In this document: positions 9,411-58,380 of the stretch, piece after piece
How the letters are laid out: each line of letters starts with the position of its first letter
Numbering within the stretch: the stretch's first letter is position 1
From: Phallusia mammillata
Lineage: Eukaryota
Length of the DNA stretch: 64,000 bases
NCBI GenBank assembly: GCA_965637545.1
Contig: OZ281495.1
Location: forward strand, 28,396,001 to 28,460,000
Reading direction: 5' to 3'
Translations under genes and position numbers: made by a program
The notes under the pieces: generated by a model
What the model was told of the DNA's origin: nothing
What the model saw: only the letters and a program-made list of their open reading frames with translations
Databases searched by the model: none

Positions 9411-12400
9411 ATGTCTAATATATCAATGGACGGTCTGGAATGCACTAATACCTCTGGTCCATACTGTGGAATATACGATGCCGGACGAATTGTTGACGCC
9501 ATATTCCTGGTGATCTTAACAGTTGTCGGCACTGTTGGAAATTTCCTTGTCATCTTTTCTATCATCTGCGCAAGAAGAGTGAACAAGAATGGAAACGTAT
9601 TCATTATTAATCTGGCTTTGGCTGATTTGATTGTGAGTATTTGGAAAGGAATGTTTAGGCAATAAGAAAAAATATTAATTAAAGACAGTTTTGGTTGTAC
9701 GTTTAGGTTTTGATTTGCTTAACTTAAAGTCGCAACAATGAACATGGTAAAAAACAAGGATTTTTTGACTATTTTTTATGCATATTTGATCATATCATAT
9801 TAAATACACATTTTAAAGTATAATATCTTGTCAAACAAGGCTTGTGGTATAAATGAAAATAGAAAATGTGTAAGTTTATGTTCAGGATAATTAATAAACT
9901 TATGTGTTGTTAAACGTGAGCGAAAAATACAACACACTGCATTCCGATAACGATTGGTTCCGGCATGTCCAGGATACCTCTGTGGTTAACAATCCTCGAA
10001 TCGATGCTAATGTTTTAACGCTAAACGGTCGATACACGCATTTTTAGCTAATTTACCAAAAAAAGAGAAAACGTTTGAACACGCCGTCAATATCATGGCT
10101 TGAATATAATAAAAACGCAGAAGAATCATGGTGGTTTGTGTTGGATAGCTCGATATTCAGAATAAAAATTAATATACAGCGGTTTATGCTTTCGTGTCAA
10201 ATAAATATTCATGTTTCCTTTTTGAGCGAAATTATTCATTCCTAAATAAATAAAAATGTAACTTAAGACTTGTTCCTGTTTTATTGAATTTTTAATCCTA
10301 TTGCTAAATTATTGCTTTAAAACATACCAAGGTGAACTGCTGCATGTTAAAATGGTGGGTAATTGTTTGTGGCTGTTACTTTCACAAATTAAACAAGATA
10401 ATACTTTTTGTTTACTGTATTGGGTAATATTACTTCGGGGAAAAGTTGGAGTAGAAAAAACTGGCAAATAGTTACAATTAAGCACCCCAGGAGCAGCATA
10501 GCATTGTAACTCACTCCAGACAAAATTTAGACTAAAACAATTGTAAGAAATACGGTCCAACAATTTCTTTGTACCAGAATTCCGTGCGAAAACAATTTAT
10601 TACTTTAAACTGTCGTGTTTCAGGTGACCGGATTTTTTACCCCAACAGTGGTTGCAAACGTCATCCGAACAACAAATGCCTTGAGTGACACAGCCTGTGA
10701 CGTAGCCGGTTACCTAGTAACAGTGTCTTGTGTGTGTTCCGCAAGCAACCTCATGAGTATAGCATTCAACAGGTAACCATATTTTTATTCTACATTCTGC
10801 GCAAATCAATCTAAACAAAATCGCCATAGTCTTATGAATGTTATCTAATGTGTAAGCCTTTAGAATATTGCAATGAATTACTCCCAAAAACGCAAGAGAT
10901 AAATTATTTTAATCGCTCATAGCACGACACGACAATATTTTTAGTTTTTTAGATTATCCTACATTTGATTGCCGGGGGATTTGAGAATAGTACTTGTTTT
11001 TTTCACTTAAAACTGTACCACCAAGCAAATCTTGTATTTGGACAAAGGAGAATTTGAGCCTTATCAATTGCCCTCAATAAAAAGATTTATATCTGATCAC
11101 GAACTATATCAGATAGGAAATCTACGAAATTCCCCTAAAAAGATTGTTACGGAAATATTTTATCGTTTCTGGTGGTGCAGCGATAGCAATACACACAACA
11201 CACGACTATATATTTCCATGTTTCAGGTATTGGGCTGTGGTTCGGCAACCAACATACAACAAGGTTTTTACAAAGCGTCGCATCTACCTCCTCGCCATTT
11301 TGAACTGGGTGTGGGCAAATCTTCTTATTATGCCAACCCTTCTCGGATGGACCCATTTGGAGTAAGTTAAATACTTGCATTATTGCATTGGTTCGTAAAA
11401 AACGTCTGATCGAACACCCATGGATTTGGGGTCTAATTAAGCTAGTGTAAAGCCACAAGGCTACGAAAATGTGTACTGCACTTAAAGTGGCTCTAAGTTT
11501 ATCTATACTGTTTTTTAAACGTTTATGTGTGTGACCAAAGCTTGTACAATGGTTTTCGGTGTACTCCGAACCTTATTTGTCAGACGAATAACGACAGAAC
11601 ATTGGCCATAGACCAAGGTTATCATGCCGGACTATAGCACACGCTCCTGTGCTTATTCCTTATATAATTCGTATGGATATAGTAAATGCATGTGTATAAT
11701 TTCGAAGACATAATTGCTAGTCATTGAAGCTATACTTATAATAGATATGATCATAGTACCTTTATGATACGAACTGTCAACACGCCTACTAAGAAACGTT
11801 TAATCTTACATTTGCATTTTGTAGTGTAGCATACAAACATCCGGTGTGGTAACTAGAACTAAGTTGACCGATTCGAGTTTAAGCACGTGTGGATTAATTG
11901 TCTTGCAGGTACGGAACAGGCATGATGCTCTGTTCATATGACAACGTCAGTGCACCCGGATATAACGCGTTTGTGTTGATTCTGGCTATTGCCTTTCCAA
12001 TTACTGCCATCGTGTTCTTCTACTGGCGTTTATTCAGGTAAGCCAGAAAAACTTACAAAATAACTTCTTTTTAAACATTCGAAATAAATAAGGAATAAAT
12101 TTATAAACGGTCTACTGAAACTGAAATATAATAAAAGCACACTTTAATTTAAAAACAAGATCAGAAAAAGTCAGTTTTTGAATGAACAAAAAACGAGAAA
12201 TTAACGGATAAATTAAATAAAAGTAAAATCTATTGTCTGTAAGGCCAAAACAAACTCGTTTATTGATATCGCAATGAAACTGAAAACAGAAAGGTAAGCA
12301 AAACAAAAAACGTAATCGTAAATGAAAATCAAAAATGATACTAATATGCGCTCGAGGCGTGGTAATACCTTCTTTAACGTAATATGCCTGAATTCTCTTG

Positions 12401-14133: not shown

Positions 14134-15196
14134 CTGACATGTTTTGACCTACCTACATGTTCTGGTCGTTGCATGTTAAATGTTGGTATCATCAACACTG
14201 TATGGATGTTGTTGTAACCTTTGAGGTAAAGTTGTCGGGCAGCGCTTTTTGATCGGGACTTAAGTTTGAATAAAACTGGTTTGATTCGGGCCTGACTTTA
14301 CACTTGGCCTTTTCTGTGCCGCAATTTTGTTTCGGACCTAAATTGAACTTTGTTTTATAAAACTTTCGCGTTCGATTTATGCGTTTGGTTTGTACTACTT
14401 GGCTCGGGCCCCAGTTTCAGGCCTGTCTGCAACTCCGTGGTGGTGTAAAGATGTGTGGTAAAAGAAAAGTTGCCCCCAAAATATTCTTAAAACAGACAAC
14501 TTAAAACAACTGTTTACATACTTCTTTAGTGGTAGGTTAAATTCTGATTAGTCTAACTCTAGTTAATCACAAGTAAGCAATAATTTATCACCGAGGCAAC
14601 CTGACAGGGGTTCGTGTTATGAAGCGCCATGATCCGTTTCCCATCAATAATAAATAATACCATTATCAAAAAGTGCATATTACCTTAAAGTAACACTTTA
14701 TAAGTTCAATGACGCCAAACAGGTCGAAAAGGTTTTTATTATAGTTGTTATTGTATTTTTTGTTTTATTGAACTACGTGCTGATGTTTTGTTGCACTATT
14801 CTTGTGGTATGGTCTAGTATAAGTGTGCTGTTTTTATTCTTTATTTTTGTGCCCATCCTTTATTTTGTTGTATGAGTTCGTACTCGATTTCTTGTTTAAA
14901 CGTTAATAAGAAAAATACAAAACAAAAACAGTTTTGTTGATACCCCTGCCTGCTTTAACAAGTCATTGGATTTACAGTTACACGCGATTAAAAGACTTAC
15001 AATTTTTATACTTTCTCACAGATACTGATGATGTTGATAAGGCGAAATATCAATATCCTAAAACATTTATCTGTATCCATACTATTCCTTTGTCTCAAAA
15101 ACCTTGTGCTTGAGCGACACATAGTGGTATATTATTTTAGTTTAAATCAAACACTTAAAAGCGCTATTGGTATAACATCGTGCGGTTTCGCATAAA

Positions 15197-15710
15197 ATGC
15201 ACAATCTGGGGTAGGAACTTGGCCGAATGGTCTGGCGCGCCTGACCCACATACAGACATAAAAAAAAACCTTAATCGGGATTCGTCCCCGGGAGTGTCCT
15301 GGGTTCGAACCCCGTGAAAAAAAAAATGCACAATCTAGGGCAGGAACTTGGCCGAACGGTCTGGCGCGCCTGACCCATATACAGACATAAAAAACCTGAT
15401 CGGGATTCGTCCCCGGGAGAGTCCTGGGTTCGAACCCCGTGAAAAAAAAATGCACAATCTAGGGCAGGAACTTGGCCGAATGGTCCGGCGCGCCTGACCC
15501 ATGTACAAACATAAAAAAACGACCGGGCTTCGTCCCTGGGAGTGTCCTGGGTTCGAACCCCATGAAAAAAAACATGCAGAATCTTCGGGCAGGAACTTGG
15601 CCGAATGGTCCGGCGCGCCTGATCCATACACAGACATAAAAAAACCATCGGGCTTCGTCCCCGGGAGTGTCTTGGGTTCGAACCCCATGAAAAAAAACGC
15701 ATAATCTCCT
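15197..15710 (+). repeat. Head-to-tail array of 4 tRNA-derived units (about 124-129 bp), each with Pol III A and B boxes and a short poly(A) end
   Basis: Units start at about 15197, 15326, 15450 and 15574. Each has TGGCCGAAYGG (A box) and GGGTTCGAACCCC (B box) and ends in a short A run. Confidence 0.85.
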
Positions 15711-15986
15711 GTGTAGCTGCTTTTTGATGCAAGTTTCTTTTTACACTTCTGCTTATGAAAACAGCAGAAAAGAAAAAATATGCATTAGTTTTAGTTTTTT
15801 TTTTCGAGCTGAACTATACACCTTAGCTTTGTAAATAGGAAAGGAAATGGCATGCGGAGTTTTCTTAATTATTCCTTTTCGATGTTCCATAACACGCTCG
15901 GCAGGCGAACTGACTTGCTGTGAACTTCAAAACCATGTTTACAAACCATTGGGGAATGAATTATTTAAAACATAAAAGCCTTAGAT

Positions 15987-24351: not shown

Positions 24352-27300
24352 ATGTCAACGCTTTTATTCAATATTACCGTTGCTACGTTGACGACCCTTG
24401 ATGAACATCATGATGAATTAGAAACTCACGGGCATCACGATCACAGTCACGATCACCACTGGGAGGATCGGAGCCAGGCCGAAATCGGAATTGAAGTTTT
24501 CTTCCTTGCCCTGATTGCAATTGTTGGCACTTTTGGAAATCTCATTTTAATTCTTTCGATCGTGATACTAAAGAGAGTTCACAAGAATGGAAACATATTC
24601 CTTGTGAATCTAGCAGCAGCGGATATGTTGGTAAGTTTTGTTAACTGTTAACATTTACAACTACTCGCACTTCGTGTAAAGACCGCAGCACCCAAGAAGT
24701 GACTTGTTTGTTAAACTCAAGTTTAGTAATAGCGGGATTCAGTTAATGTGACAATATATTGTAAAACAATTAAAATTCTGTACCAGCTGGCGAAAGAGAT
24801 GACTTTCGCTTTGACCAACGCCATTATGAAACAATTAGTTAATTAACGCAGCCTAAACGCCAAACCTACGTTTAATTGCCCATTAAAGGCCCATTTCCTT
24901 ATGTCAACAGTTAAGGAGTATGACAGTTGAAACGTTAGGACACCTGCGAGAAATTACATTACCAACATAACGATTTTAATCCTTTCAGGTCTCGTGTGTC
25001 TGTGTGCCAATTGTAGCCGCCAACGCCGCTTTGGGAATGAATGTACTTCCCGAAATCGGCTGTACCATCATGGGATATTTGACCATCGTGTGTTGGGCAA
25101 ACTCCTTGTCAAACTTGGCGTTTATAGCAGCAAATAGGTAAGCTGTGGTTCAAAGGTGTTTAAAAATATCTAAAAAGGTTATTGGAATACACAAGGATAC
25201 ATTATCTTAATATTTCTCTAATCCACATTGGGTTGTTGTATTTGTTTGCATGGACATACTGCATAACGGCAGAAAAATTGATGCATAGTGCATATTGCTT
25301 AGGTACAGCATGGACATATGCGTGGGTGCAACTCCATAGCCCACATATATAAGTAAACGTCGCGCTGTTTCTGAGTAAAAACACGGGCTTGTATCCCCCA
25401 TTGCGATGTGTTGACGACTGCAGATCAATGTATGTTTAATGTAGGTAAATCGATCGATTGCTCATTGGTATTAATGACGGCTTTAATTAGAAACTATTTT
25501 AAAGTAGAAGGGTCAGCGCAAAACAAAATACCAAACAAATTCACCTACTTTTCGGTTTGAAGACATTTAGTGGCATATACAGTTTTAGTAGTCGCTTGCC
25601 TGTAAAAGTAGATATGAACCCGCATGCCACAAGATTACAATTACATTAATTCTTGCCAGGACCGCCAATTAATCATCTGGTGACAAACTCTTTTATAACA
25701 AACATTAGTGGAGTTTGCATGCCCGAATTTGTCTTATGATTTAAACGATATGTGCCATCATATATTTAAACGATATGTGCCATCATATGGGCATCAATTT
25801 TTTTGGAATCAAAACTATGGATGTAGTTGGAATTCTTTTATAACGGGAAATTTTTTTTTTAACGAAAACATTGTTTATTGTTTATTGAGTAATGCGCGCG
25901 GTTTATATGCAAACGAGCACGTATTGGCAAAAACTTGTCCATTAGTGTTGTTATTCCGACGTTAATGAATGTGTTTGCGTTGTTGATGAGAAACTTAAAC
26001 GAACTCAGTTGACTTTTGCGCGAGTAGCCACATTTGGTAGGGAATTTATTCTTTGTCTTTTTGTAACTATGCTATAAAAAAGATAAAAATTTTACAATTA
26101 TTAGGTTTTCGCAAAATACCCTTTTTTTTATTTAAGTATTTGCGTAAAATTTACTATTATGAACTACCCACTATGGCCATTATGAATTGGCTACTGTGGC
26201 CAATTTCAAACTACATGCAACCGATTTGGTTAGAGTGTGAATTGTTATTTTTGATTGCCTAAATCTCAGGCAGTTTAATTAGCTTGCCTTTAACTTTTAT
26301 TCTATGAAATCCAATCACAATTTTCTGCTAATCCGTAATGTATGGTTGGAAATGTCACGGATTTTCCCACTGTTTTTGTCCAAAATCCTATAAATAGCGG
26401 GTCAAAGGTTAATTCGCATGCATATTTTATCTTCGTGTTGCGGACATCCTATGTCTACGACCATGTTTGGTACATAATACATACTCGTACTGATATGCGG
26501 CCCCCGATTGACTTTCTTTTGTCGTTTAAAGACTTCGTGACTATGATTTTTTCTTGTGTCGTAATGGCATTATGGTGTGTGTAATGCAACGAAAATACAA
26601 CGTTACGCGGTCTTAAACTCAGTTGTCCTTCAAAACACCATCGGTATAAAATAGCCAAGTTAACTCACGTGCCTTTAATAACAGATGAAAGGATGCATTA
26701 TACGATCTTAAATTAAGTGGTATAATTAATCTTTGCACTGGCTATAGAAAGAAGTGAAAATTACAACGGTGTTTTAACACCGCATATTTAAATTCTTAGC
26801 ATTGAAAATAAACAAACTTTGTCAGCCAAAATGCATAGACAGTATTAGTGCAATAAATGTGTTTTTTATTTTGCCGACATTAGCATAGCTTTCTATATTT
26901 AAATGTGATTTGTCATGCATTGAAACTTTATGTTGACGCAATAACAAGTGCCACTGTGCAATGGCCGCCGCATTACTAACTAAAGCGATGACGAAATGTT
27001 TTTGCGTGATGTTATAACACACTGCTTTTGAGCTAATTCATACGCTCTTTATACCCTACTCGTTTCGTCACACTGATTTTTATGATCTCCATAGATACTG
27101 GGCAGTTGTCCACTACGAGTCACACAGCCGATATTTCTCAAAGAAACGAACAATCGCCATGGTCTTGGTCACTTGGCTTTGGGCAAACCTTCTTATTATG
27201 CCCGTTCTGACTGGCTGGAGCAAACTGGAGTAAGTTTTTCGAAAACTATTATTTTGAAACAACAACCTACCAACTAAGTATAACATGACAGACTCTTATA

Positions 27301-34400: not shown

Positions 34401-37400
34401 GGGCAGTTTGTCTCTTGGTTTTGTTGTGGTGCGACGTTTAGAATTAATATCTGGCGCAGGTATCTGTGTGTGAGGAACACCCCTGAAGTAGAGCAACATA
34501 AAACAGGTGTTTACTTTAAGGAAATGACGATAAAAGGATAAGGCAAATGACACGCTTCGATGCGTATTAGTAAACACGGTAGCCTGGTCGACACAACATC
34601 CTGTTATTCTACGTTTGTGTGGGAACTTGCTTGGTATACCATTTATTATCATTTTAATCTCAACAATATAAAGTCCAAAAGCAGTAATGATTGTTTGTTT
34701 TGGGGCAACCATATTTAGTTTTGCACCCTGTTGTTTAGGCACTCACTTCCTCGAATTGTTTGTGCAATACTTTAAAGCGAACGTTTTTTAATCAGATTGG
34801 CCGCCACCTGATGGCGCCATTAATGCATTGAAGAAACGCGATTACCATATATTGAGACAAATTCCGCGACAACTATTTTCAATTGAATATTGCATATCTC
34901 GGCACTGACTCTAAAAATTTTAAGGTCAGTGTTACCAATGTCACACTACTTTCTTGCCAATGTCACCCTACATATTAACATTGATAAAAGATCTTAACGA
35001 ACAACTAATACAAAATATCAATGCCAAACATTGTTTATGTTTTACATCAATCAACGATAACAATTTGGTTACAGTTAATAAATCGAAAAACGTTTAACAT
35101 AAATAATTTAAGGTTTATTTTTCTATTTTTTACTTCCACAGAAAAAAATGTACTGCGCTAAAGTGTAATGTATCATACTGTTATTGGCAGTGTCTAACGT
35201 TTTCGTAACAGATTAAAATTTGAACAACATTCATAAGCAATCAGTCCATTTCAGGTCCTTGACCTTTCTGTTGTTTAAGGTTGTGCACTATTAATTCTGC
35301 TGCAATCAGGCAACATGAAACTGTAAGGTAAAACTTTTTTACTGCTTTAGAAATACACAAAATGTTTTAGTGGGCTTGTTTTGTTACTCCTGTAATACCC
35401 ATATAACACAATTGTGGTCGTTATATAATGCTAATTTCCCACGTTTGTAAATTCTAGATGTTTTGGTCATTCTACAAAACGTTTACTTACCATCTACAAC
35501 AAGTGATTATCAACGACAAGTGATCATCTATCTTCTTTTCAGCAAAAGGTCAGTGATATATACTAGGCACCCACAACAATTGGTTGGCATTACGGCCTCA
35601 GTTTTTCCTTTTGGAGGTTTGAGATGTGGCAGGTCAGTTTTCAAGATTGACCTTTCTAGAAATTGTTTAGCTGCAGCAATAATCGCTGATTTTTTATAGG
35701 TCATATGCAAGATGAAAGCGGCGCCACACGTACTGTTTGATGTTTTTTTGTTTTTTACTGCCTGACGCAATAGGAAGATAATAACAATTTAAACAGTTTT
35801 TGCTGCTTGAAACTTATCGCAGTTTTAGTAATCGGGTACAACCATCTTTCGAATGCAAGGTGCAATCAGTAAAGCTCGTGTTGACCAGTAAATATCCTAG
35901 CTGTGGTTTCCGACTACAGGTCGTGCTTAAGTTGCAATAATTTTTTTTTGATTTTTGGTGGTATTGTTGTAAGGTGGTCTGGTTCCATCTTCATTCGTTG
36001 CTTTATACACTACTAAAAGATTGTTTAACCTAGAAATTGACCAAGCAAATGTTTATGTCGGGTGTTACCAAGAAATGTGCTCGTATATTTATCCAGAGTT
36101 TGTTTTTTATTATTTATGAACTTTAGTTAAAAAAAACTGGGACTTAAACAGTAGCAACGTATATTCACCCAACATGACATTGGTTGTGTCCAGATTGCGA
36201 ACCAGCGCGCATTATCGCGCACCGTAAGGGTTCGGGCACTTTTTTTGTCTTCCTTCTCAGTACATCTTGTTGTCAAAGTCGGAAAACAATTCAACGCTGG
36301 CGAGGCGTTGTGAACTGCATTACATAAACGAAATCACTAATGCGTAACAAACAAGCGTCACGTGCTAATCACTAATTATGCCTCCAATAAACCTTCGTCG
36401 TTAAGGCGCTGTTAACGCGCCTACCCTCCGCCGTCTTTTGCGACGGTTACAATTACAATGACCTGGCGTCGACGTAGAAACGTAATGGATGTGTTTGCAT
36501 TTTTGCAAACGGTTGCAGCACACAATTACATTGGTTCTAATGGCCCGATATAAATGACAAAATTGGATTTGAATCTGACTGAATTCGAATCCAAAGGATT
36601 TAACATTTTTAAACAACCCTCTCTGGGCACAATATTTTTCCTCTTTATATAGAGATCATCGAACCGAGAATATTACAGATTACAACATTTAAATACAAAT
36701 TATGTTTCGCTGTTAAAAAAAAAAACAATTCAACACTGTATCACACTAAACAAACTGCACGTGCATTTTACACACGAAACAGTTTTTTTTGAAAAGGCAA
36801 AGGCAAAGAAGCATGCGACAAAATTTGCGTTCTGATTGCCTGTAAGATTTTTTGTAGAAGTATTGCATGTTGCAAGAGAATGCACAACCTGGTTATTTTC
36901 TAAGGGACACTTTAAAGAATTCACGTGACAATTTGTTAGATTCGGTGATTTAAAACTTGAACATATTTTTAAAAGTCATCCGCAGGTGGTGGTTGGGTTA
37001 TATTGTTAATTCTGTACAAATTGAAACTAAAGTCTTGATCGTTTAGTGTATTTAACTCGCCGATGGTAAACAACAGCTGATAAGGTTATTGTTTGCTCGG
37101 AACGTCTTTTGTGTGGTGATTTGATTATGAAGAGATCAGTCTTGCCAATGTTGCGCCTATCTCAAAGCTGACTGCCTAGGTCAATAGTCAAACGAAAAGC
37201 GAAAACAACCGACATGCAAAACCTTTAGGATATTGCCACGTGCTTTCTCTGTTTGCGATCAACAGACCTTGTTCATATAAAGCCGCGATAAAGACCATAA
37301 TCGTGGAACTAAGTTACATGGAGTGCTGATTTTTTGTAAGAACCTTGTGCAATTCTCATTGACCTTATTAATGTTTGATTACTTGTTGATAAATTTATGA

Positions 37401-39166: not shown

Positions 39167-41835
39167 TGCGTACTTGTCCAACTTGGTGCGACAAAGTAAA
39201 AGCATAGAGCCAATAAATGATAAGCTGCAGACAGTGCACACTGATTTGGTGCGACAAAGATTTGCGAAAACTTAACAATGCAGTTTTTCGTTACAAGGTA
39301 TATACAACCAGATTAGTTTCATTTTATCTAAGGGCGCTAGTTACCTGAAAAAAATCACTTTAACTAACATACAAAATGTTCAGCTTGTACAACAACTCTT
39401 ATTAGATTTATTAGTAAGATAAATTTGCAGATTAACCTAACAGCTTTCTAGCGTTGTAAAATCCTTCACATGTAAGCAACCCAATTTCTGCTATCGTGCT
39501 AAAAGCCCAGAACATGCGACTGCAATATTTCGTTTTTTTTACTGTTAAAACTCTGTATTTGTTGTAAACTTTTTTGTTACTCGCTCTTTATTCAGCACAC
39601 GTAACACAAATTGCCATTCGGGACTAGTGATAGAATAATTTAATTCAGTTTAGGAGGATCAGAAATTTGCTGGTTTCCAAATTTATGGATTGCTGAGTAA
39701 ACAACATGATAGGTTTACAGGACAAAAGGATACTTGAATGATCTTTTTTGATTGTGTTTGATGACGAGTGCGTGTTTGCACTCCGAAGAGCAACGACGGT
39801 AAAGTCGTTGAAGACTAACCTAACAGCTGTCTAGCGTTGTAGAACCCTTCACATGCAAACAACCCCAATTCAGCTAGTGCGCCAAGTACAACCACAATGA
39901 AACCAAACTTTCAACTGGACCCGAAACTTTGGTTTCGCTCACTTCGTTGTACTGGTTTGATGGAGCTTATATTGTTGTTACTGCAATATTTCAAAATAAA
40001 CGTTAGGTAACACTATGGTAAACGGTCTTGTTAATAAAATCAGATTGTTAGATCTAAAACGGTAAATGCAGTAAAAGATAACTATAATACACTGAGAAGC
40101 CATCTTTTTCACTTCCTCATTTCTTATCTAATTGAGCAAACAAAAAGATTAATGATGTAAAGAAATGCATTTGCGTTACTCAATGAAGTGCCAGTCTAAA
40201 AATGTTTCATTTTAATCAGGCGCGTACTCAAATGAACCACGCAGCTTGAACGCCTTGGTCTGTTCTAGGGTTTTAGCCGAAATCTACAGTCCTGCAAATA
40301 ACGAAAGATGACTGCATTGAACAAAGAGATTCAGCCTTCCATTTAAACACTTTTAAACTCTCACGTCTCCAACTCTGGAGAGAGCAAATATGCTTGACTA
40401 GACTGTCCGCCTACGTACAATTTCAAGACATTGCAAACAACGGTTTTCCACCTGGGGAATTCCCGACTGATGGCGTTGAAATTGTGCAGTCAACCGTTGC
40501 AGAATTTTCGTGAAGTAAAAGACGCCACTTGCCTCTTCAGCAAAATTGCAACATTTTAAGGGCCTTTTTTACTTTAGTTTCTTGTCTTTCTTTCCTCGCC
40601 TCCATTGGTATGAAATAGCGTATTTGTAAACCCAAGGCTATAGCAGCTGCATCTAAAGTTTTTCGCAAATTATAACTACCTCGCTGTGTGTCTAAACAAA
40701 AGTGTGCCAAAGCTGAAACTCTGTTGTGACTTTGTAAAAAGTAAGATTTTCAAATATATTTTCCTTCCAGATGCCCAGATACACTATCAGGCAACTAGAA
40801 ATACATGCACCTTTCCTTTTTATATTGGAAAACATATAATCGATATTGCCACATTGTGAAAACAGTCAAATAAACGTCTTAGTTGTAAAATGCCTTTCTC
40901 ACTTGTACGCGCAAAACATATTTTATGGTTTTTTTGTTCCTAAGTTTGTAAAAGTATTTCAACTGCAGATATTTTCAACAAACTAGAAAACGTTTCCTTA
41001 CCATACCGTCAGTTTTCAAGATAGCACGTAATATTCATAGTCGGCTACTGCCACCGTCAGAATGCGAGTAAGTTATGGGTGCTCATCGGTAAGTTATGGG
41101 TGCTAATTTAAGCATCCCCTCGCACGCGGTACTGTTTACTATTTTCTCAAAAGCAAAAGAAATATCAACACTTTTACGCCAAGTTCATATTCCTGGTGCG
41201 TAAGACTCAAAACAACTTTATTTAGACTGTCATGTTAATTATATGTACACAGAGCCAGGTATTGTTAAGAACTTTTGCACACTTTCAGCTTGACTCCAGG
41301 CCAAGATCCTTAATATGCTTCGAAGAAGTATTTTTCAGTGAGTTTATTTGCTTGATTAACATAGTATTAATAGCGATAGCATGCTAACTAAGACAGTCAC
41401 TAAACTATTTGTTGAACGTTGTCACAGGGTTGCAAACAAAACAGGAAATTGTAAAACAGAAAATAAAAACTACAACCACATTGCCACAAATCTTGCCAGT
41501 TTTTATTACCGATTTTTTTTAAAATCTTATTGTCGTGAAAATTTCATGTAGTTTTCAGGCAAGTCGATTGTGATTTTTAGCTTAAGTGTGTTTTTAACAT
41601 ATTTTCCGTTGAAATAGTATAAATTCTTAGCAATAAGGCCAAATTCTTTGAAATAAATTGTAAACATAGTATTTTCGCTCAAATTTTTTAACATAGTGTT
41701 GTTACGGTACAAATCAAATCAATCCTTTACATGCATATCTAAATCTAAATGCTTTATAGGTAAAATGTCAGCAACAGAAGTGCTGTAAGTACCACAGGTT
41801 TAGCAATTGTACGTTAAGGGAAATTTTGGACGTGT

Positions 41836-42700
41836 TTACTTGGTCGCCTTTGAAAGCACCCATGAAGCAACGCGGACAAGAATATGCAGTGCTTCAGAAT
41901 AATGATTTTGCCATTTCGATTCTTCGTTCTTTCTGCGAGCCTCTTCTTCTTTACGAGCCTCTTCTTCTTTACGAGCCTCTTCTTCTTCACGAGCCTTTTC
42001 TTCTTCACGAGCTTTTTCTTCTTTAAGAGCCTTTTCCTTTTTACGAGTTTCTTTTTTATCCCTAGATTTTTTACGAGCTTCTTTTTCGCGGGCTTCTTGT
42101 TGTCTCCGAATCTCTTCTTTGCGAATATTCTGTCTTTTCCCTTCCATTTCTCGTTGAAACTCTTGTCCTTTCCTTTTCATGTCTATGTGAAACTCTCTTT
42201 TGTCCTCTTCAATTTCTCTTTGAAACTTCTGTCTTAGCCCTTCCATTTCTCGTTGAAACTCTTTTTTCCCTCTTCCATTTCTCTTTGAAACTCTTGTCCT
42301 TTCCTTTTCATGTCTATGTGAAACTCTCTTTGTCCTCTTCCATTTCTCTTTGAAACTTCTGTCTTTGCTCTTCCATTTCTCGTTGAAACTCTCTTTTGTC
42401 CTTTTCCATGTCACTTTGAAACTTCTGTCTTTGCTCTTCCATTTCTCGTTGAAACTCTCTTTTGTCCTTTTCCATGTCACTTTCAAACTTCTGTCTTTGC
42501 TGTTCCATTTCTCTTTGAAACTTCTGTCTTTTCCATTCCACTTCCGCCTCTCTGCGAGCCTCTTGGTTCACCCGTTCCGCTGAAAATTCTCTCTCGTATC
42601 GTGTTACAGTTTGTTCGTGATAGCAGCATAACAACGCAAACAGTACAATAACTCCAGGCGTGACACATTTCTTCCCGATTTGTCCAAGTCCGATGACCAT
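41836..42700 (-). pseudogene. Single-TM protein with 11/22-residue amphipathic repeats and an EEEARK low-complexity tail (about 288 aa if two 1-nt homopolymer deletions are corrected)
   Basis: ORF 42700-42314 (hydrophobic GVIVLFALLCCY, then QREMEEQRQKF-type repeats) continues into ORF 42486-41836 after single-A losses near 42330 and 42265. 66-nt DNA periodicity at 42361-42490 and 18-nt repeats at about 41935-42020. May be an intact gene with sequencing errors. Confidence 0.6.
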
Positions 42701-49747: not shown

Positions 49748-52700
49748 GCTTAAGTAGAAGAACGAAATTTCTTTTCATTTTAATTTTATAATCTGTTAAA
49801 AATCTAACACTGTAAAAGGAAAGGAAAACATTTTAGTTTATAACGTTGCACCAGTTAGACGAAACAGTTTACAAAACATGCAAGATGTTGCACCAAACCT
49901 TGTATAGTATGTATGTACCACTCTTTCGGCTACACATAGACAATTTCGTTTCATTCATAAAACCATAGTTTTGTTGCGTTCGTCGGTGCATGTTTCAGCT
50001 TGTACACAAGTTTTCAAATATTCATATAGATTGTCCTAAAAACACAACCAGCCTAACGCGAAAACAACCGACATGCAGAACCTTTAGGATCTTGCCACAC
50101 GTATTCTCTGTTTGCGATTAACAACACTTGTTAAAATATAAAGCCGCGATAAAGACCTTAATTTAGGAACAAAGTTAACATGGAGTGTTAATATTTTGTT
50201 AGAACGTTGTGCAATTCTCCTTGATCTTACCAATGTTTGATTACTTATGGATAAATTAATCAATTACGGAAATGAAATGGAACCTTATTGGTTTATTGAC
50301 TGACCCATGGTGTAGTTTAACATTTTGCGTGATTTGTATTTGGACCAGGTTGATGTTAGATTTGCGCCTTGGTAGAAATCAAATAGTTAGAGTGCATCTT
50401 CAGCTGCAAAAACTTATTTATAAACTGTGAAATTTTTTGCCTACCTTCTCATTTTAACATATGACTGAACACGTTTGCCTGTTTGCGACGTGATATAAAA
50501 AGTGAATGCCAGTAAAACCCCTATATTAACTACATCAGTTGTGTTAACTGAGCTGGGCACTTTAGATTATTTGGACGCAAAATGAGTTATTTTAGACCCA
50601 AAATGTGCAAAGTCAATAACGGCTCACCACAAAAGTCAAAGATACCGGGCATGCACTGGTTTAATTTAGGCCGCGCAACTTTATTAAAACTACAAAATCA
50701 ACAGCGATCAAAGTACGTTACAATTAATTACAATTAGCACTTGGCGACTCTCAGCCAACACTTTGCGTTACCAGATTATCTGTATTACTTGTGTAAGTCA
50801 CTTGAAGATTTACCTAACAGCTGTCTAGCGTTGTAGAACCTTTCACATCACAACCCAATTCAGCTATAGTGCTATAAGCACAGCGAAACCAGGGTTTTAA
50901 CGGAAACCGAAACTTTGGCTTCGCTCACCTCTTTGCACTGGTTTGGTGGAGCTTGTATTCTTGCTACTGCAATATTTCAAAATAAACGTTAGGTAACACC
51001 CAGGTAGAAGGTCTTGTTAATGAAATCCAATCGGTGGAACTAAAGCGGTAAATACAGTAAAAGGTATAACTAATACACCACGAAGCCATCCTTTTCACTT
51101 CCTCATTTCACATCTACTTGAGCAAACAAAATCAAACCTGAATGCAGACAAGGTAACTGATGTAAAGAAAAGCATTTGCGAGTGCCAATTTGAAAATGTA
51201 GTTCCATTTTAACCAGGCGCGCACTAAAATCAACCAAATAGCTTGAACGCCTCGGTTTGTTCTGGGGTTTTACCCTAAATCTACAGTCCTGCAAATAACG
51301 AAAGGTTACTGCTTTGAACAAATATTTATCATGCCTTTTGAAATCATCACATATTTAGCTCTGAGAAAGGCAAATAAGCTTGACTAGACTGTCCGCCTAC
51401 GTACAATTTCCTATGACACGAAACAATGGTTTTCCATCTGGGGAATTCCCGACCGATAGCGTTGAATTTGTGCAGTCAACCGTTGCTGGATTTACGTGAA
51501 GTAAAAGGCGCCGCTTGCCTCTTCAGCGAGATTGCAACATTTTAGGGACCTTTTCTACTTTTAGTTTCTTTTCTTTCTTTCCTCGCCTCCATTGGTATTA
51601 ACTAGCGTATTTGTAGACCGAAGGCTATAGCAGCTGCTTCTTAAGTTTTTCGTGTTGATGTATTTCTGACGTCGTCTTTACGAGCCTCAATACAAATTGT
51701 TGCCCAGACAATGAATAAAAAACTTTGCTAAACTTACCTCAAACCTATAAGCATTAAATGTCAAACCAATTTATAACATTCTCACCACAAACCCAAATTG
51801 CTGAGTCAGCACCATAAACGCCTATGCTCCGTTGCGCCACCTACCAAAAATTCCCAGACCGGGCGCAAGCCAAAGTTCAGTGTTAGTAGCTCTACCATGT
51901 TTGTAAGTCCGGGAAATCTATAAGTAAGATAATTTGGTAAAAATATGCTAAAATACTATGAAAACATTAAACGATAATAAATGTGCTGTCTGTGAAACCA
52001 CGTCAACAAGCGCATATTGCATGTTAAGTAATCTCTACCACTCTTGATTGGTCTCTGCTTTTCAAGCTGCCTGTCGCTATAATACTTCACGTATCTAGGA
52101 GTAAACGACTTGTTACGTAACAAACACAAACTATTTTCGCGAATGAATATACAGGTTTATGTATTTTGACTGTAATTCAGTTAAGCCAGTTTCTTGTTAA
52201 ATGTATGTTTTATTTCAATGGTCGTAAAGTGAGTTAAAAAGCGTGAGTTAGGCAGTTACATCTTTGAGCACCTGACCATTGTCAGTAAGTTTGCTTCATT
52301 GTTTGTTGTAACGTTACAGGTTTAAACAAGTTTTGCGTTTTGTGCATGTAGATGTTTTTTGAATGCATAGTCTGTACATATGAACAGTTGAAAAAAGGTG
52401 AAAAAATTGGGTACATAAAAACATAACGCATTTGTCATTTAAATCCTAACAGTAAATGTGCGGTTGATACAGAACGTTTATTAATTAGGCAGTGTTTTTG
52501 GCAGGACGCTTTTTCTACTGGCAGCTATAGTCAATTTGGCCGCAGAACTTTGTTTCCAAAGTCGGTGCACGCTTTTTTTTTTTTTTTTGTAATTAGGTAA
52601 CATGCTGTTGTGTGGTAACTTGCTTGGTATTTTCCTTTTTATAATCAATCATTTAACGTTGTAAGTTCTGTAAACGCTAATGAATGTATATTGTCCAAAT

Positions 52701-53683
52701 CTGGTTGTGCGTTTATCATGCGTGTATACTGTGCCGGCTATGAAGTCATATTTGTAGGTGAATTAGACTTGTGTTGGTTTGTTTTCCATGTCTACAGCCT
52801 GTTGTTTAGGCACTCACTCCCTCGAATTATTTCTGCAATAATTTAAAGCGAGCTTATTTTTATCAGATTGGTCGCCACATGAAGCCGCTATTATGCATAA
52901 AAGAAACGCAACTACCTGATACTACACATTTTAAGGTTGGTGTAGCTTTCTTGTCAAGCAATATGTATGTTTTACACGAATCAACGACAACAATGTGGTT
53001 GTAGTATATAACGTGAAGTTAACAAATATTATAAGATATTTTTTCTCTGATAAAATTCACTGTCAAACTGTGTTGTTTTATGTATCACACTCTTTTCACA
53101 TCTTATAGACAATGAAATAATTGTGTGGAGACTGTAAATTGACTTTCCACGTGTACGCTGTATTTAAGTGCTAGGTTATTTATTGGTGTTTTCAAGTTTG
53201 TAAAAGTATTTCTTTTTTAGAGGTTTTCGCCCAACTACAAAATGTTTCTTTCCATCTACAGCAAGTTATCGTCCACTATTTCCATCATACAACTTACAAG
53301 TGTCGCTAAAAGGTAGGTTAGATGTCAAGCTATCTTGTAATAGTTATCAGTTATTAGCTAATTTGTTGAAAAAGTTTAAATGTGTTGTGTGCACGTTTAC
53401 GTTTGGTTAGGTTTCTAAAGTTGCCGTGACTGTCTTATAAAACCCATTAAAATAAAGATCGCATTATATAGTGTTTACTGTGAAAATATAAAAAGAATCT
53501 AACGTTTATTTTACTTGCCCGTTATCTGCTAAGAAAAGATAATGTTGCTAATGAAGTGTCATTAAATTTAGTGCGTGATTTACGTTTCACAAAGGTATAC
53601 TTGATTTATGTGGATGGTAGTTAATCGTTTCTCTACCTAACAGAATTGCCAAGGAACATTATACATATCTCGAATTAACTACA

Positions 53684-53902
53684 ATGGGAAATACCGTGTC
53701 AGTTTCATTCTGCGGATTAAAGGAAATCGAGGTGAAGGGAAACGCTACCGGTTTCTTCGGAGTGTTGGTACTTGGAGCCATTTCGACAAGTGGTCTTGTA
53801 ATTTCTGGGGCAGTTGGAGTTGTATATTTACTACGTGATGTAGTTGGAAATGTTTTAAAGGAGGTCGGGCGAGATTTGTTTGCCAAATACTTGGGTTTAT
53901 AA
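53684..53902 (+). CDS. Gly-rich hydrophobic microprotein (72 aa) with an N-myristoylation-like start (MGNTVS)
   Basis: Intact ORF; splice acceptor ctaacag at 53637-53643 upstream; AATAAA at 54042-54047; alignable paralog at 63392-63583. Confidence 0.6.
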   Translation: MGNTVSVSFCGLKEIEVKGNATGFFGVLVLGAISTSGLVISGAVGVVYLLRDVVGNVLKEVGRDLFAKYLGL

Positions 53903-54099
53903 ACGATTTCAAACAACGTAGAAAAAAGCCCCAATGTAATCCCCGTAGTCATTTCTAACCCATTGCACATTCCACTTTCCTTGAATTATGTATATGTATG
54001 TTGTTGAAACAGTTTTGTTATTAAACGAATCTCCCGCAGACAATAAAATGTACAAAAGAAAGATTCTTGCTTCTGATCAGTATAGTATTGGACTGTTTC

Positions 54100-55127
54100 A
54101 TAAAAACAGATAAAAGCATAAATCGTTTCTTTTAATAACAGAAATATATATTTCGCCTTAATAAATAGGCATCGTCAGTTTCTGCAAAAAAGCAAACATG
54201 TAAGGGGCTGTCGGTAAAAGTAGTAAAAAATAAAATAGTTAAAACACTTATAAAATTTAAAACTGTACAAATTAAACAACTGTGAAGCACAGAGGCAAAC
54301 CACGACTAGCGAGTGGCCACAAGCGACACGAGAAAAGGCAAGAAAAAAGAGACGTGATAAACTGATAAGCCATTAAAAAACACGGTGGGAAGTAAATAAA
54401 CCTCTAGGCGTGAAGAAACAAAACATTAAGGGGTAGAAACACAAAAATGGGATTACCTCACGCGCGGCAGAATCATTTTTTGTATGTTAATTTCGGCCTT
54501 GATTTTGTTCAGCCATTTATCTTCAAAAATATCTAAAAGATTTGGTGAAGGCATTTGCACAAACACAACATAAAAACACAGGTGGATGTGCGGTTTACGC
54601 TTTAATATCGCACTATGGTTCTCCGCGTAGTGGCGCAGTAGCGCAGTAGCGCAGCTCGGTCATTGTTTGCCGAGCAGTCGAACGTTTTCCAAGTGGCGCG
54701 ATGGGTATTCCACCGTGTGGAGAACTTGTTCTTGGTTTGACCAACATATTGCTTGCCACACTTGCGGCAAGTGGCCACATAAATGCCGTAGTTGCGACAT
54801 GTTAGATTTTGGCGAAGTTGGATACTGCCTGTGGGCGTTTTTAAAACGGTGGTATGGTACACCATAGTTTGGTGACTACCAAAATTGCCACATAGTGCGC
54901 ATTTTCCGCATGGACTTGAAGAGCCTGTGCCGTTGTCTTTGCCTGCCTTACTGATGGACAAAGCTTTGAAGTTGGATAGAAAGTGTGCCAGTGTGGGTGG
55001 CCTTTTGTATGTAATAGAAGCCAAAGGTTCCATAGCTTTCTCTTTTTGAGTCAATAAAACACAAGCAGGGAATGCCGTAGCCCAAACAATTCGATTTTGA
55101 GGTCTATTTTTGTCTTCCGGCCCAAAC
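54100..55127 (-). mobile_element. 5'-truncated Penelope-like retroelement (GIY-YIG endonuclease region plus 3' end)
   Basis: Translation ITYKRPPTL..PCGKCALCG..H..NLTCRNYGIYVATCRKCGKQYVGQT..RWNTHR..AALLR matches the Cys/His-rich linker and GIY-YIG domain of PLEs. After removing an 8-bp duplication it continues ..LDIFEDKWLNKIKAEINIQKMILPRVR* (stop at 54453-54455). A hammerhead motif lies downstream. The lower boundary is approximate. Confidence 0.85.
54139..54184 (-). ncRNA. Minimal type I hammerhead ribozyme in the Penelope-like element 3' region
   Basis: Minus strand CAGAAA-CUGACGA-U-GCCU(auuuauua)AGGC-GAAA-UAUA-UA-UUUCUG: both core boxes, a 4-bp stem II, a 6-bp stem I and a vestigial palindromic stem III. 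Confidence 0.75.
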
Positions 55128-55234
55128 CTTGTCGAAATGGCTCCAAGTACCAACACTCCGAAGAAACCGGTAGCGTTTCCCTTCACCTCGATTTCCTTCA
55201 ATCCGCAGAATGAAACTGACACGGTATTTCCCAT
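54602..55234 (-). CDS. Chimeric ORF (210 aa): 35-aa host microprotein N-terminus fused in frame to a PLE GIY-YIG endonuclease fragment
   Basis: The first 35 codons are identical to 53684-53788; the junction codon AG|G is at 55128/55127. An 8-bp tandem duplication (gcgcagta, 54633-54648) truncates the endonuclease C-terminus. Expression is unproven. Confidence 0.55.
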   Translation of the reverse strand: MGNTVSVSFCGLKEIEVKGNATGFFGVLVLGAISTRFGPEDKNRPQNRIVWATAFPACVLLTQKEKAMEPLASITYKRPPTLAHFLSNFKALSISKAGKDNGTGSSSPCGKCALCGNFGSHQTMVYHTTVLKTPTGSIQLRQNLTCRNYGIYVATCRKCGKQYVGQTKNKFSTRWNTHRATWKTFDCSANNDRAALLRYCATTRRTIVRY

Positions 55235-56499
55235 TGTAGTTAATTCGAGATATGTATAATGTTCCTTGGCAATTCTGTTAGGTAGAGAAACGATTAACTA
55301 CCATCCACATAAATCAAGTATACCTTTGTGAAACGTAAATCACGCACTAAATTTAATGACACTTCATTAGCAACATTATCTTTTCTTAGCAGATAACGGG
55401 CAAGTAAAATAAACGTTAGATTATTTTTATATTTTCACAGTAAACACTATATAATGCAATCTTTATTTTAATGGGTTTTATAAGACAGTCACGGCAACTT
55501 TAGAAACCTAACCAAACGTAAACGTGCACACAACACATTTAAACTTTTTCAACAAATTAGCTAATAACTGATAACTATTACAAGATAGCTTGACATCTAA
55601 CCTACCTTTTAGCGACACTTGAAAGTTGTACTGTTGGAGCAGTTGCAGAAGCCTAAAAAACGCGGAGGTGAAGTTTGGGTAAACATTAGCGTATCAACTT
55701 CTTCAGGCTCCAGCGTGTAAAGTCAGTAGAACAACTAATCAACAATAAGATCGTAAAAAGCAATCGAAATCACTAAGCCTTTTTACATGAGCGAATCGAA
55801 TCGTATCGTTGATGCGCATTGTGTGACGTCACGATTTCGATTCGCTAAAGCGTAAAATTACATGGTTGCCGAACCGAATCGCATTCAAGGGTTCAGCTTT
55901 GCGCAAAAACGATATGGTGGTCATTGCAAAGTGATATTCAAAGATAAGGCCGGATAATTGTTAATTTTAAAGTATTTTTAGACTTTTAGTCTATTCTTCC
56001 GAAAAAAATCTGAATTAATTTGTGTGCAGCAGTTGTTTGCGTCGAGTTTAGACATACCAAATGTATGAATTTGTTTATTGTGAACAGTTAAACCCTCAGG
56101 AATAGTTGGAAGAAATATTCAAAGTGTATAGATCACTCTGACTTCATTGTCCAATAGTAATAAGTGCTGATTTCTAAGTTGTACGTACTAAAACTGTTTT
56201 ACATTTCCAGGCCATGTAGCACATAAAAAAAATTCTTTATATGACTGTACAAATCTATTAAATTTGTTTCATTAGAATCTATTGTGGGTTATATGTATAA
56301 AAAACGACTAATTTGTATAAATTTGCACCAGTTGGACGAAAAACTCGATTAAATATGTAACTTATGGACCGTCCGTTCAGTGTATGGACCGTTCGTTCAG
56401 TATTAGCTACAAATTTCCCCGTTACTTTCGGCACCAAATTAAACAAACAACATATGGTTTCAAGTTGACGTAATTGTTCACAAAAGAGTTCTCCTAAGC

Positions 56500-57036
56500 C
56501 AGGGGTGCCCAACACGTGGCACGCGTGCCAAATGTGGCACGCAGAGCATTTTAATATGGCACTCGAGCTTTTGCTAGTATTAAATAGATACAGTATTAAA
56601 TAGCTTATCATTTATTGGCTCATATGCTTTTACATAAATAGATACACATTGTGATTTCTCACCCTACCAACTTTTTGTCTATTTTCTGAATTTCACAAAC
56701 AAGTTTACTTGCATTTGACATGCGAACTTTCCCTTGACGAGTCTATTTAACGTTCTACATATTAGCCGAATATTCGGAATTGCCCCCAATCGGTAATAAG
56801 TTAGGAAGATTTAACAACCTTCTGTTTCGTCTGGGAAAACCGGCAAAGGGTAACAATAGTAGCCTACACGTGACAAGCTGGGCTACAAACTGTAGTGAAG
56901 ATGTGGACGCGTAGGGAAGAGCACAATAATTGTCCAGTAAAATATCCCGTGTTTACAAAAAAGACCAAACTTTGGCACGCGAGTTTTTTTGATAACCAAA
57001 ATTGGCACGGCATTGTTTTCGAGTTGGACACCCCTG
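56500..57036. mobile_element. Non-autonomous hAT-type element (537 bp)
   Basis: TIRs caggggtgcccaac / gttggacacccctg; perfect 8-bp TSD tcctaagc. Confidence 0.88.
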
Positions 57037-57055
57037 TCCTAAGCGTATTGGCGCC

Positions 57056-57178
57056 TAAGCGTATTCAAACCACCTGTGCCGAGCGCATCGAGAATCGGAG
57101 AAGTCTAATACGCTTTGCCTTTTTTCTTTTTCGAAAACGAGAGAAATGCGTATCGAATAAGCGTATCGAATACGCTTA
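57056..57178. mobile_element. Short putative MITE adjoining the hAT element
   Basis: Terminal inverted repeat taagcgtattc / gaatacgctta with an internal gcgtatcgaat repeat; no clear TSD. Confidence 0.4.
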
Positions 57179-57959
57179 AACGCTCGGACTTCCTAAATTA
57201 AGTGATTCTAAATGTGTAAGTATAAATTATTTCTCCACCGATTCCTAAATAAATTAAAGCTGGAGACTAAAGGGCTAATATTCCCTGAAACTAATACGGC
57301 GTTTGCACGGTTATTTATTTGGAATAACGACAAATGACTCCACACTTGAACAAACTACAGACCATTAGTTTGTTTGATGCTTCCTTCCACGACTTAACCT
57401 AAAGATTTCGATGTTTGCATTTCGATTTAGATACAAACCACCATGTACAACTGGATGTGGTCACTAATGCAGCTGTTGCTTGAGGTTGGGATGTTTACCG
57501 TCGGTTATATAGCTTAACGCAGATGTTTTTTAGTTGTGGGCATTGTGTATGATGAAAACTGGTAACAAAACCAGATATTGTAGTGCACTGAATCACATTC
57601 AGTTTTTAAAACGCGTTGATTATGTCACGAAATTTAACTTAACGATCTTTCATTGTATTACTGACTATACGATCGTCATCAAATTGTGTTCATAATTATT
57701 GTTTATAAATTACGAGACTTTGGTAATTGCAAACCAGCTAAATGCTTTTCTCCCCTTTATTACTTTATTCTTGCCTTTAATAATATCACAAGCTTCATTT
57801 TAACCGCTCCCTTGCGAGAAAGCAACTTTATTTGGAGCTGTGTAACAGCTGTGTTCTTGTTTGATCTATGAGAAAAATCAATCATCCCATTTAAACATTA
57901 TCATGATTCAGTAAAAAACAAAACCGTCGAAATATCTGATTAATAAAAGACCCCTTCAT

Positions 57960-58241: not shown

Positions 58242-58380
58242 NNNNNNNNNNNNNNNNNNNNNNNNNNNNNNNNNNNNNNNNNNNNNNNNNNNNNNNNNNN
58301 NNNNNNNNNNNNNNNNNNNNNNNNNNNNNNNNNNNNNNNNNNNNNNNNNNNNNNNNNNNNNNNNNNNNNNNNNNNNNNNN
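58242..58380. other. Assembly gap (139 N)
   Basis: Run of N characters. Confidence 1.

What the first reader, a model, noticed from the sequence alone, without database searches (positions are those of the whole stretch)
53288..55630. Penelope-like element captured a host gene's upstream region and N-terminus: in-frame myristoyl-motif/GIY-YIG endonuclease chimera inside an inverted duplication
Seen: 503 bp (about 400 bp of upstream sequence with the splice acceptor, plus 35 codons of the MGNTVS microprotein) is duplicated in inverted orientation and joined precisely to the 5'-truncated end of a PLE. This makes a 210-aa ORF, or 257 aa with a complete endonuclease C-terminus if an 8-bp duplication at 54633-54648 is removed. 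The parent gene remains intact and converges tail-to-tail with the chimera. Established: PLEs encode RT plus GIY-YIG endonuclease and are often 5'-truncated with inverted segments. Inference: RT template-switching onto flanking DNA created a new gene in one step, possibly a membrane-targeted Zn-finger/nuclease, and the two arms could also pair as dsRNA to silence the parent. Caveats: an in-frame join has about a 1-in-3 chance, and this allele lacks the distal conserved Glu/Asn, so it is probably nuclease-dead.
Basis: partly seen in the sequence, partly recalled or inferred. Interest (0 to 1): 0.85.

Follow-up and report, generated by a model that had tools for sequence, protein, structure and literature searches.

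The report
Penelope insertion with folded-back host DNA
A jumping gene landed just behind a small host gene and, while inserting, copied 503 bases of that gene backwards onto its own broken end; the join happens to be in frame, but the fused protein has lost its cutting residues and its upstream control region and was not seen in RNA, so it is most likely an insertion scar, not a new gene.

Summary
The structure is real: 503-nt inverted arms (4 mismatches), a 210-aa in-frame ORF, and an 8-bp duplication absent from family contigs. The element is a 5'-truncated, Neptune-type Penelope-like element (about 54004-55130, minus strand) with a minimal hammerhead; its family has tens of copies. Public contigs show the arm is single-copy host DNA, and another animal carries an allele without the insertion. 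The inner join has 3-nt microhomology, which fits fold-back of the stalled cDNA onto the neighbouring gene. Inverted 5' arms are the normal Penelope scar (4 of 6 relatives; the scan also noted several elsewhere in this genome). The only unusual point is that this arm is host flank rather than element end. The new-gene reading lacks support: an in-frame join to this ATG arises at 7% of landing sites, the upstream conserved block was not copied, the membrane helix is cut, the catalytic Glu/Asn and last zinc His are frameshifted away, and one RNA run shows parent and family transcripts but no chimera. No listed contig spanned the inner junction. Verdict: a variant insertion scar, mildly useful for Penelope mechanism.

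The parts
53288..53790 (+). Left arm: native host DNA that served as template (end of a predicted non-coding exon to 53312, predicted intron 53313-53643, 5' UTR, first 35 codons of the parent ORF)
   Evidence: single-copy depth and contiguous with left flank in run X4, record 27
53684..53902 (+). Parent ORF, 72 aa, starts MGNTVS (PROSITE myristoylation pattern), one hydrophobic helix; orphan
   Evidence: no homologue; RNA-run contigs 53654-53841 and 53889-54034 at depth about 4
53194..53269 (+). Conserved non-coding block (shared with 35452-35507 and 40942-41004), with a predicted acceptor at 53261; lies outside the arm and was not copied
54004..55130 (-). 5'-truncated Penelope-like element, Neptune-type: end of RT thumb, CxxCxxC linker, GIY-YIG endonuclease, 3' UTR; 3' end at about 54004-54008
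   Evidence: repeat depth begins here and unique contigs end at 54007/54033/54034
54138..54185 (-). Minimal type I hammerhead ribozyme motif: CUGANGA, one extra base, 4-bp stem II with G10.1-C11.1, GAAA, palindromic stem III, 7-bp stem I; predicted cut after 54145
   Evidence: features as in PMC4209133; not detected by Rfam
54633..54648 (.). 8-bp tandem duplication in this copy; frameshift before the distal His, Glu and Asn
   Evidence: family contigs lack 8 letters at 54633 in all four runs; frames
54458..54632 (-). Distal endonuclease segment (D..E..W and IN motifs), out of frame in this allele
54602..55234 (-). Chimeric 210-aa ORF: 35 host codons, junction codon, 174 element-derived codons ending in 12 out-of-frame residues
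55128..55130 (.). 3-nt microhomology at the element/arm junction, matching 53788-53790
   Evidence: family continues past 55130 in frame as W-K-E-R-F (loose end)
55128..55630 (-). Right arm: inverted copy of 53288-53790; no hammerhead, no element sequence beyond the microhomology
   Evidence: outer junction on contigs 55592-55799 (X1) and 55592-55783 (X2)
55631..55638 (+). Right flank at the outer junction: 6-of-7 match, shifted by one base, to the template's continuation (53281-53287)
   Evidence: suggestive only

Best explanation
A single, fairly recent, still polymorphic Penelope-like insertion with a templated inverted duplication of the target flank; the fusion ORF is an accidental, most likely silent by-product. 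Steps: (1) The endonuclease of an active family member cut AT-rich DNA about 100 nt after the stop codon of a small host gene, and reverse transcription was primed there (inferred from the known mechanism; position shown). (2) Synthesis stopped after about 1.13 kb (shown: 5' truncation). (3) The cDNA 3' end annealed through 3 nt to the same strand 215 nt upstream of the insertion point, exposed by resection or strand opening, and was extended for 503 nt (microhomology and geometry shown; enzyme not known: element RT or a host repair polymerase). (4) The new end was joined to the right-hand target end, possibly through an imperfect 6/7 microhomology (suggestive). (5) Later the arms drifted by 4 substitutions and the endonuclease took an 8-bp frameshift (shown). 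This is the geometry that normally gives Penelope elements their inverted 5' copy; here the fold-back landed beyond the element's end, in host DNA.
For: Element identity and truncation. Family of tens of 98-99% identical copies with its own transcript, versus single-copy arm. Allele without element and without second arm in X4: one contig 52736-54007 at flat depth 7.67 that runs on for 408 letters not listed as a second piece. 3-nt microhomology. Inverted arms in 4 of 6 relatives with long flanks, all overlapping element sequence. Inverted 5' copies described as typical of PLEs (PMC8557442); microhomology 5' joins and host DNA capture in PLEs (PMC3846280); cDNA self-annealing fold-backs and locally templated inserts for L1 (PMC11702581); fold-back inversions at breaks in yeast (PMC11724301). 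Chance of an in-frame join 7-21%. Loss of Glu, Asn and distal His. No chimera contig in the RNA run.
Against: No listed contig spans the inner junction in X1 or X2 (bin arithmetic), so the in-frame join rests on the assembly. Only one putative RNA run was laid, as contigs, at depth about 4 for the parent, so a rare chimeric RNA would be missed. The empty site could not be read, so a target duplication or deletion is not established. DNA fold-back and a jump onto the parent's unspliced RNA give the same sequence.
Confidence: 0.68

Rival explanations
1. Same event, RNA template: the stalled reverse transcriptase jumped to the nascent, unspliced transcript of the neighbouring host gene and copied it towards its 5' end. 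The product is again a silent scar.
For: The arm has the orientation a cDNA of the parent transcript would have; the parent is transcribed; PLEs are known to retain introns and to mobilise intron-containing host genes. In Ciona the first exon plus intron has a median of about 455 nt, close to the 356 nt between arm end and acceptor.
Against: The arm ends inside a predicted exon that starts at 53262 behind a good acceptor, not at an obvious start site; the outer 6/7 microhomology fits DNA annealing.
Confidence: 0.15
2. Expressed chimeric neogene: read-in transcription from upstream repeats, with cis-splicing or leader trans-splicing to the copied acceptor, makes a myristoylated protein with a zinc-binding linker and a dead nuclease stump; or transcripts across both arms form a hairpin that dampens the parent.
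For: Open 210-aa frame from a good ATG context; the intron's donor and acceptor are copied; the right flank ends in an acceptor-like CAG exactly at the arm's start (0.3% of positions); myristoylation pattern is rare among local ORFs (2 of 175); tunicates trans-splice first acceptors (organism from earlier notes).
Against: No chimera contig and an unbroken parent-allele contig across 53719 and 53790 in the RNA run; upstream conserved block not copied; membrane helix cut; frameshift arose after insertion; allele absent from another animal; exact protein not on record; truncated domain models poorly (pLDDT 50, weak evidence). After splicing only about 170 nt would pair.
Confidence: 0.07
3. The whole 2.3-kb unit moved here: a read-through element RNA carried the host gene as a 3' transduction and the ordinary inverted 5' copy was made from its end.
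For: Both arms end at the unit's outer edges, as in canonical inverted PLE insertions; host spacers inside PLEs are known.
Against: In X4 the host gene is contiguous with the left flank from 52736 without the element; arm depth is single-copy; no target duplication brackets 53288-55630.
Confidence: 0.04
4. The inner junction or the right arm is an assembly artefact.
For: No listed contig across the inner junction; X2's arm contig 53297-54033 is unbroken; an assembly gap lies 2.6 kb away.
Against: The right outer junction with its own allele at 55622 is on contigs of two runs; X1's arm contig has about the summed depth (43.5) and breaks at 53718, where the arms first branch; the arms differ at 4 sites; a 3-nt microhomology with the true family sequence sits at the join.
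Confidence: 0.06

Closest known systems
Canonical endonuclease-positive Penelope-like elements, Neptune clade (Arkhipova 2006, as summarised in PMC8557442)
   Same: C-terminal GIY-YIG after RT, CX2-5CxxC linker, CCHH motif, hammerhead near the 3' end, 5' truncation, inverted segment at the 5' end, AT-rich target.
   Different: The inverted segment is single-copy host flank starting 215 nt beyond the element's end, not the element's own pseudo-LTR; clade not tested on RT.
Inverted pseudo-LTR insertions and host-DNA capture by Adineta vaga Penelope (PMC3846280)
   Same: Inverted repeats around the unit, microhomology 5' joins, captured host DNA, chimeric ORFs that survive if in frame.
   Different: There host DNA lies between pLTRs or inside the ORF; here it forms the inverted arm itself and its source is the adjacent target.
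L1-associated fold-back junctions and locally templated insertions (PMC11702581)
   Same: cDNA 3' end self-anneals to resected target DNA through a few bases; extra sequence is templated from DNA near the site.
   Different: Seen somatically for a LINE with an AP endonuclease; here a germline PLE allele, with the chromosome healed after 503 nt.
Fold-back inverted duplications at double-strand breaks (yeast, PMC11724301)
   Same: Microhomology-primed fold-back synthesis, then end joining.
   Different: Those are mostly 5-34 bp and involve no reverse transcription.
Naiad/Chlamys PLEs (PMC8557442)
   Same: CX2-5CxxC finger and inverted insertions.
   Different: Naiads carry the endonuclease at the N-terminus and lack canonical hammerheads; this one is C-terminal with a hammerhead, so it is not a Naiad.

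Membership tests
EN+ Penelope-like element | GIY-YIG endonuclease C-terminal to an RT in one ORF | tested here: met
   Pfam GIY-YIG; aligns to C-termini of RT proteins P0002, P0004, P0012; the RT core itself is truncated away in this copy
EN+ Penelope-like element | CCHH motif within the endonuclease | tested here: met
   CxxC between GIY and YVG, His after RW, distal His in the second frame; incomplete in this allele's reading frame
EN+ Penelope-like element | Minimal hammerhead in the terminal repeat region | tested here: met
   cleavage not assayed
EN+ Penelope-like element | Dispersed multicopy family with 5' truncation | tested here: met
   depth about 15-50 times single copy; family continues past 55130
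EN+ Penelope-like element | Telomerase-like RT phylogeny | not tested
   RT core absent from this copy; no reference set at hand
Neptune clade | CX2-5CxxC finger in the RT-EN linker | tested here: met
   CxxCxxC invariant in alignment A1
Neptune clade | Placement by RT tree (versus Nematis) | not tested
   no RT in the window
Naiad/Chlamys | N-terminal endonuclease, no canonical hammerhead | tested here: not met
   endonuclease is C-terminal in full-length relatives and a hammerhead is present
Canonical inverted pseudo-LTR insertion | Inverted arm is a truncated copy of the element's own 3' end | tested here: not met
   arm is single-copy host DNA with no hammerhead; relatives' arms do overlap element sequence
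Canonical inverted pseudo-LTR insertion | Target-site duplication and 30-40 nt tail | tested here: inconclusive
   no shared 7-mer bracketing the insertion; empty site not readable
Active GIY-YIG nuclease | Catalytic Arg, His, Glu, Asn in one frame | tested here: not met
   Arg and first His present; Glu and Asn out of frame
Domesticated or chimeric TE-derived gene | Junction-spanning transcript | tested here: inconclusive
   none in one putative RNA run held as contigs
Domesticated or chimeric TE-derived gene | Fixed or conserved, single copy under purifying selection | tested here: not met
   absent from the X4 allele; frameshift private to the copy. The 6 synonymous versus 4 non-synonymous differences from family contigs more likely reflect the source lineage
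N-myristoylated protein | Gly2 with accepted residues at 3-7 | tested here: met
   PROSITE pattern match only; modification not testable here

The most novel reading that the evidence does not exclude
Penelope integration folds back on the target itself, so it can duplicate and invert the 5' part of a neighbouring gene in one step; here that made a segregating chimeric gene that is transcribed by read-in and splicing to the copied acceptor and yields a myristoylated zinc-finger protein or a hairpin RNA against the parent. The weaker half of this claim (flank fold-back is a recurring outcome that reveals how inverted pseudo-LTRs form) I put at about 0.3; the expressed, functional chimera at the probability given.
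Probability: 0.07. Interest if true: 0.7.

Novelty: new variant of a known kind. Interest (0 to 1): 0.3.

Why it matters
How Penelope-like elements make their inverted ends is described as unresolved (PMC8557442, PMC3846280, PMC11167929). Ordinary insertions cannot tell a second truncated cDNA or self-priming on antisense RNA from a fold-back at the target, because the arm is element sequence in every case. An arm made of adjacent host sequence, joined by 3-nt microhomology, can only have been made at the insertion site after priming, so such alleles are informative if they recur. One case could equally be host break repair. As a new gene it would be a snapshot of gene birth, but nothing here shows expression or function.

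Tried and rejected
Naiad/Chlamys (my first guess): rejected, domain order and hammerhead. Arm as the element's own pseudo-LTR with an antisense ORF: rejected by depth and the X4 contig. Paralogue of the parent in the window: none significant; the 63-aa ORF at 63583-63392 scores E 0.67. Homologue searches for the parent: blank, which holds only for proteins of similar length. Exact look-up of the chimera: blank. Rfam: no hammerhead hit. Locus scan with alignment A1 failed; with the single protein it gave 5 loci. No close (over 60%) family member was found in protein collections, so the full-length element was not read. AlphaFold models were uninformative; no fold search was run. The bacterial promoter scan does not apply. 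A neighbour-gene search to name the organism was blank; the organism is taken from earlier notes only. The N run at 58242-58380 was left alone. Read laying allowed one call, so the inner junction could not be re-examined.
Full report
Observation. The longest inverted repeat in 44-64 kb has arms 53288-53790 and 55128-55630, 503 nt, with four substitutions. The minus strand carries a 210-aa ORF, 55234-54602, whose first 35 codons equal those of a 72-aa ORF at 53684-53902 on the plus strand. The one coding difference between the arms is synonymous.

The element. The part of the ORF after the join hits Pfam GIY-YIG and has 651 relatives in a full HMMER scan, the best full-length ones being 806-974 aa proteins with an RT domain, matched at their C-termini at 44-53% identity. 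The alignment shows the end of the RT thumb, an invariant CxxCxxC linker, GIY and YVG with an inner CxxC, the conserved Arg and His, and then, in a second frame, the distal His, the D..E..W motif and the IN motif. Against I-TevI the distal Glu and Asn align with the known catalytic E75 and N90 region (weak E-value, residue roles from established knowledge). A C-terminal endonuclease with a CX2-5CxxC linker is the Neptune layout; Naiads have the endonuclease in front and no hammerhead (PMC8557442). About 270 nt after the stop codon lies a minimal type I hammerhead, 54185-54138, with the extra base between positions 9 and 10.1, the G10.1-C11.1 pair and a palindromic stem III that PMC4209133 lists for PLE hammerheads.

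What public reads show. One call laid contigs of three DNA-like runs and one RNA-like run on 51800-57600; these are contigs, so depth is only a rough guide. Depth over about 54004-55130 is 15-50 times the single-copy level, with contigs 98-99% alike, so the family has tens of young copies. Family contigs in all four runs lack 8 letters at 54633: the duplication belongs to this copy. A loose end behind 55130 gives the family's continuation, which reads W-K-E-R-F in frame and shows that 55128-55130 belong to both the element and the arm: a 3-nt microhomology with 53788-53790. Unique contigs stop at 54007, 54033 and 54034, which puts the element's 3' end near 54004-54008, in AT-rich sequence about 100 nt after the parent's stop codon. 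In X4, a different sample with 18 differences, a single contig covers 52736-54007 at flat depth 7.67 and continues for 408 letters that are not listed as a second piece; the right-arm bins are empty. So the parent gene is native to this place, and the insertion with its second arm is absent from that allele. In X1 and X2, which match the window exactly and may be the source animal, both outer junctions are on contigs, and in X1 the arm contig has about the summed depth and ends at 53718, where the arms branch. No listed contig crosses the inner junction; bin arithmetic shows none laid on 55131-55291. A short low-depth path into a high-copy repeat is easily pruned or filtered, but this remains a gap in the evidence.

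Mechanism. With the element on the minus strand, the cDNA grows rightwards from about 54005 on the plus strand and stops at 55130. The next 503 letters are the complement of the same plus strand, read back from 53790 to 53288. The simplest reading is that the cDNA end annealed through three bases to its own strand 215 nt upstream of the priming point and was extended, then rejoined the right-hand end; the right flank matches the template's continuation at 6 of 7 bases with a one-base shift, which is suggestive only. Inverted 5' copies are the ordinary PLE scar. Among six relatives fetched with long flanks, four have inverted arms of 134-1155 nt, each overlapping the ORF end, a hammerhead core, or sequence similar to the window's hammerhead region. 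Here the arm has no element sequence. Fold-back of a cDNA end onto resected target DNA and locally templated inserts are documented for L1, fold-back inversions at breaks for yeast, and microhomology joins and host capture for rotifer Penelope. My paper searches found no description of a PLE whose inverted arm is host flank, but the library is incomplete. A jump onto the parent's unspliced RNA would give the same sequence and is the main mechanistic rival.

Is it a new gene? If the fold-back had landed anywhere in the 1 kb left of the element, 7% of positions would fuse the element in frame to this ATG and 21.5% to some ATG; 1 of 23 sites with the same three bases does so. In a genome where earlier notes list many inverted Penelope insertions, such a join is expected somewhere. 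The arm begins inside a predicted non-coding exon and holds a predicted 331-nt intron, but not the conserved block at 53194-53269 or anything upstream, so expression would need read-in transcription. The captured 35 residues keep the myristoylation pattern but cut the hydrophobic helix (hydropathy 1.9 to 1.1). The frameshift removes the Glu, the Asn and the last His of the CCHH finger. In the RNA-like run X10 there is a family transcript (54026-55092, 18 differences, no duplication), two parent contigs at depth about 4 (one with the left-arm allele running unbroken past 53790, one crossing the host/element junction), nothing over the upstream 1.5 kb or the intron, and nothing attributable to the chimera. 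This is one shallow run, so it does not prove silence, but it gives no support. It also suggests the parent is not fully silenced in a carrier. Differences from family contigs are 6 synonymous and 4 non-synonymous, which more likely reflects the active source lineage than selection on this copy.

The parent. It has no homologue in the collections searched and no significant paralogue in the window. It looks like a real small gene: good acceptor and ATG context, an ORF longer than 97% of shuffles, a pattern met in 2 of 175 local ORFs, RNA contigs over the coding part, and neighbours that are also short hydrophobic ORFs. Its function is not known; a small single-helix membrane protein is the likeliest reading.

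Organism and limits. Earlier notes name the sea squirt Phallusia mammillata; I did not verify this (the element's relatives include Phallusia proteins at 49-55%, which is no proof). The trans-splicing argument depends on it. The N run at 58242-58380 was not touched.

Verdict. A real, polymorphic, dead-on-arrival-type Penelope insertion whose inverted arm was copied from the neighbouring host gene. It is a variant of a known scar with some value for mechanism and little evidence for gene birth. Interest 0.3.

Noticed in passing
window 38000-64000: Degenerate tandem array of 2.5-5.6 kb units with short single-helix ORFs on the minus strand (39205-38849, 47316-47050, 61660-61472); the 88-aa member has no homologue of similar length.
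   Followed up: partly
window 54026-54183: Depth over the hammerhead end is several times to twenty times that over the coding part, which points to many short hammerhead-only copies of this family.
   Followed up: no
window 55631-55679: Depth in X4 equals 37 nt at the depth of record 27, so the empty allele may rejoin near 55643 after about 250 letters missing from the window: a possible target deletion including the parent's own 3' end. Arithmetic only.
   Followed up: partly
window 54020-54047: The element's tail, read on the parent's strand, offers ATTAAA and AATAAA, which could now end the parent's transcript.
   Followed up: no
window 55631-55651: On the minus strand the flank ends in a pyrimidine-rich CAG exactly at the start of the right arm, an acceptor-like site met at 0.3% of positions.
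   Followed up: partly
window 56500-57036: High-copy element with short terminal inverted repeats starting CAGGGG and an 8-bp target duplication, hAT-like MITE, nested in other repeats 55770-57185; contigs that skip it exist.
   Followed up: no
window 41836-42700: Long charged repeat ORFs with an 11-residue period behind a hydrophobic segment.
   Followed up: no
window 9321-9665 and 24352-24651: First exons of two GPCR-like genes, the second with a His-rich N-terminus.
   Followed up: no
window 15147-15732: Tandem repeat that opens ORFs in three frames.
   Followed up: no
L002 3359-5228; L007 836-3749: Relatives with canonical element-derived inverted arms of 655 and 1155 nt.
   Followed up: yes
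L001 1-888 (P0001): The top protein hit holds the endonuclease segment twice in tandem on a 915-nt contig; probably an assembly duplication or a partial tandem insertion.
   Followed up: no
window 58242-58380: Run of N 2.6 kb right of the finding; left as it is.
   Followed up: no
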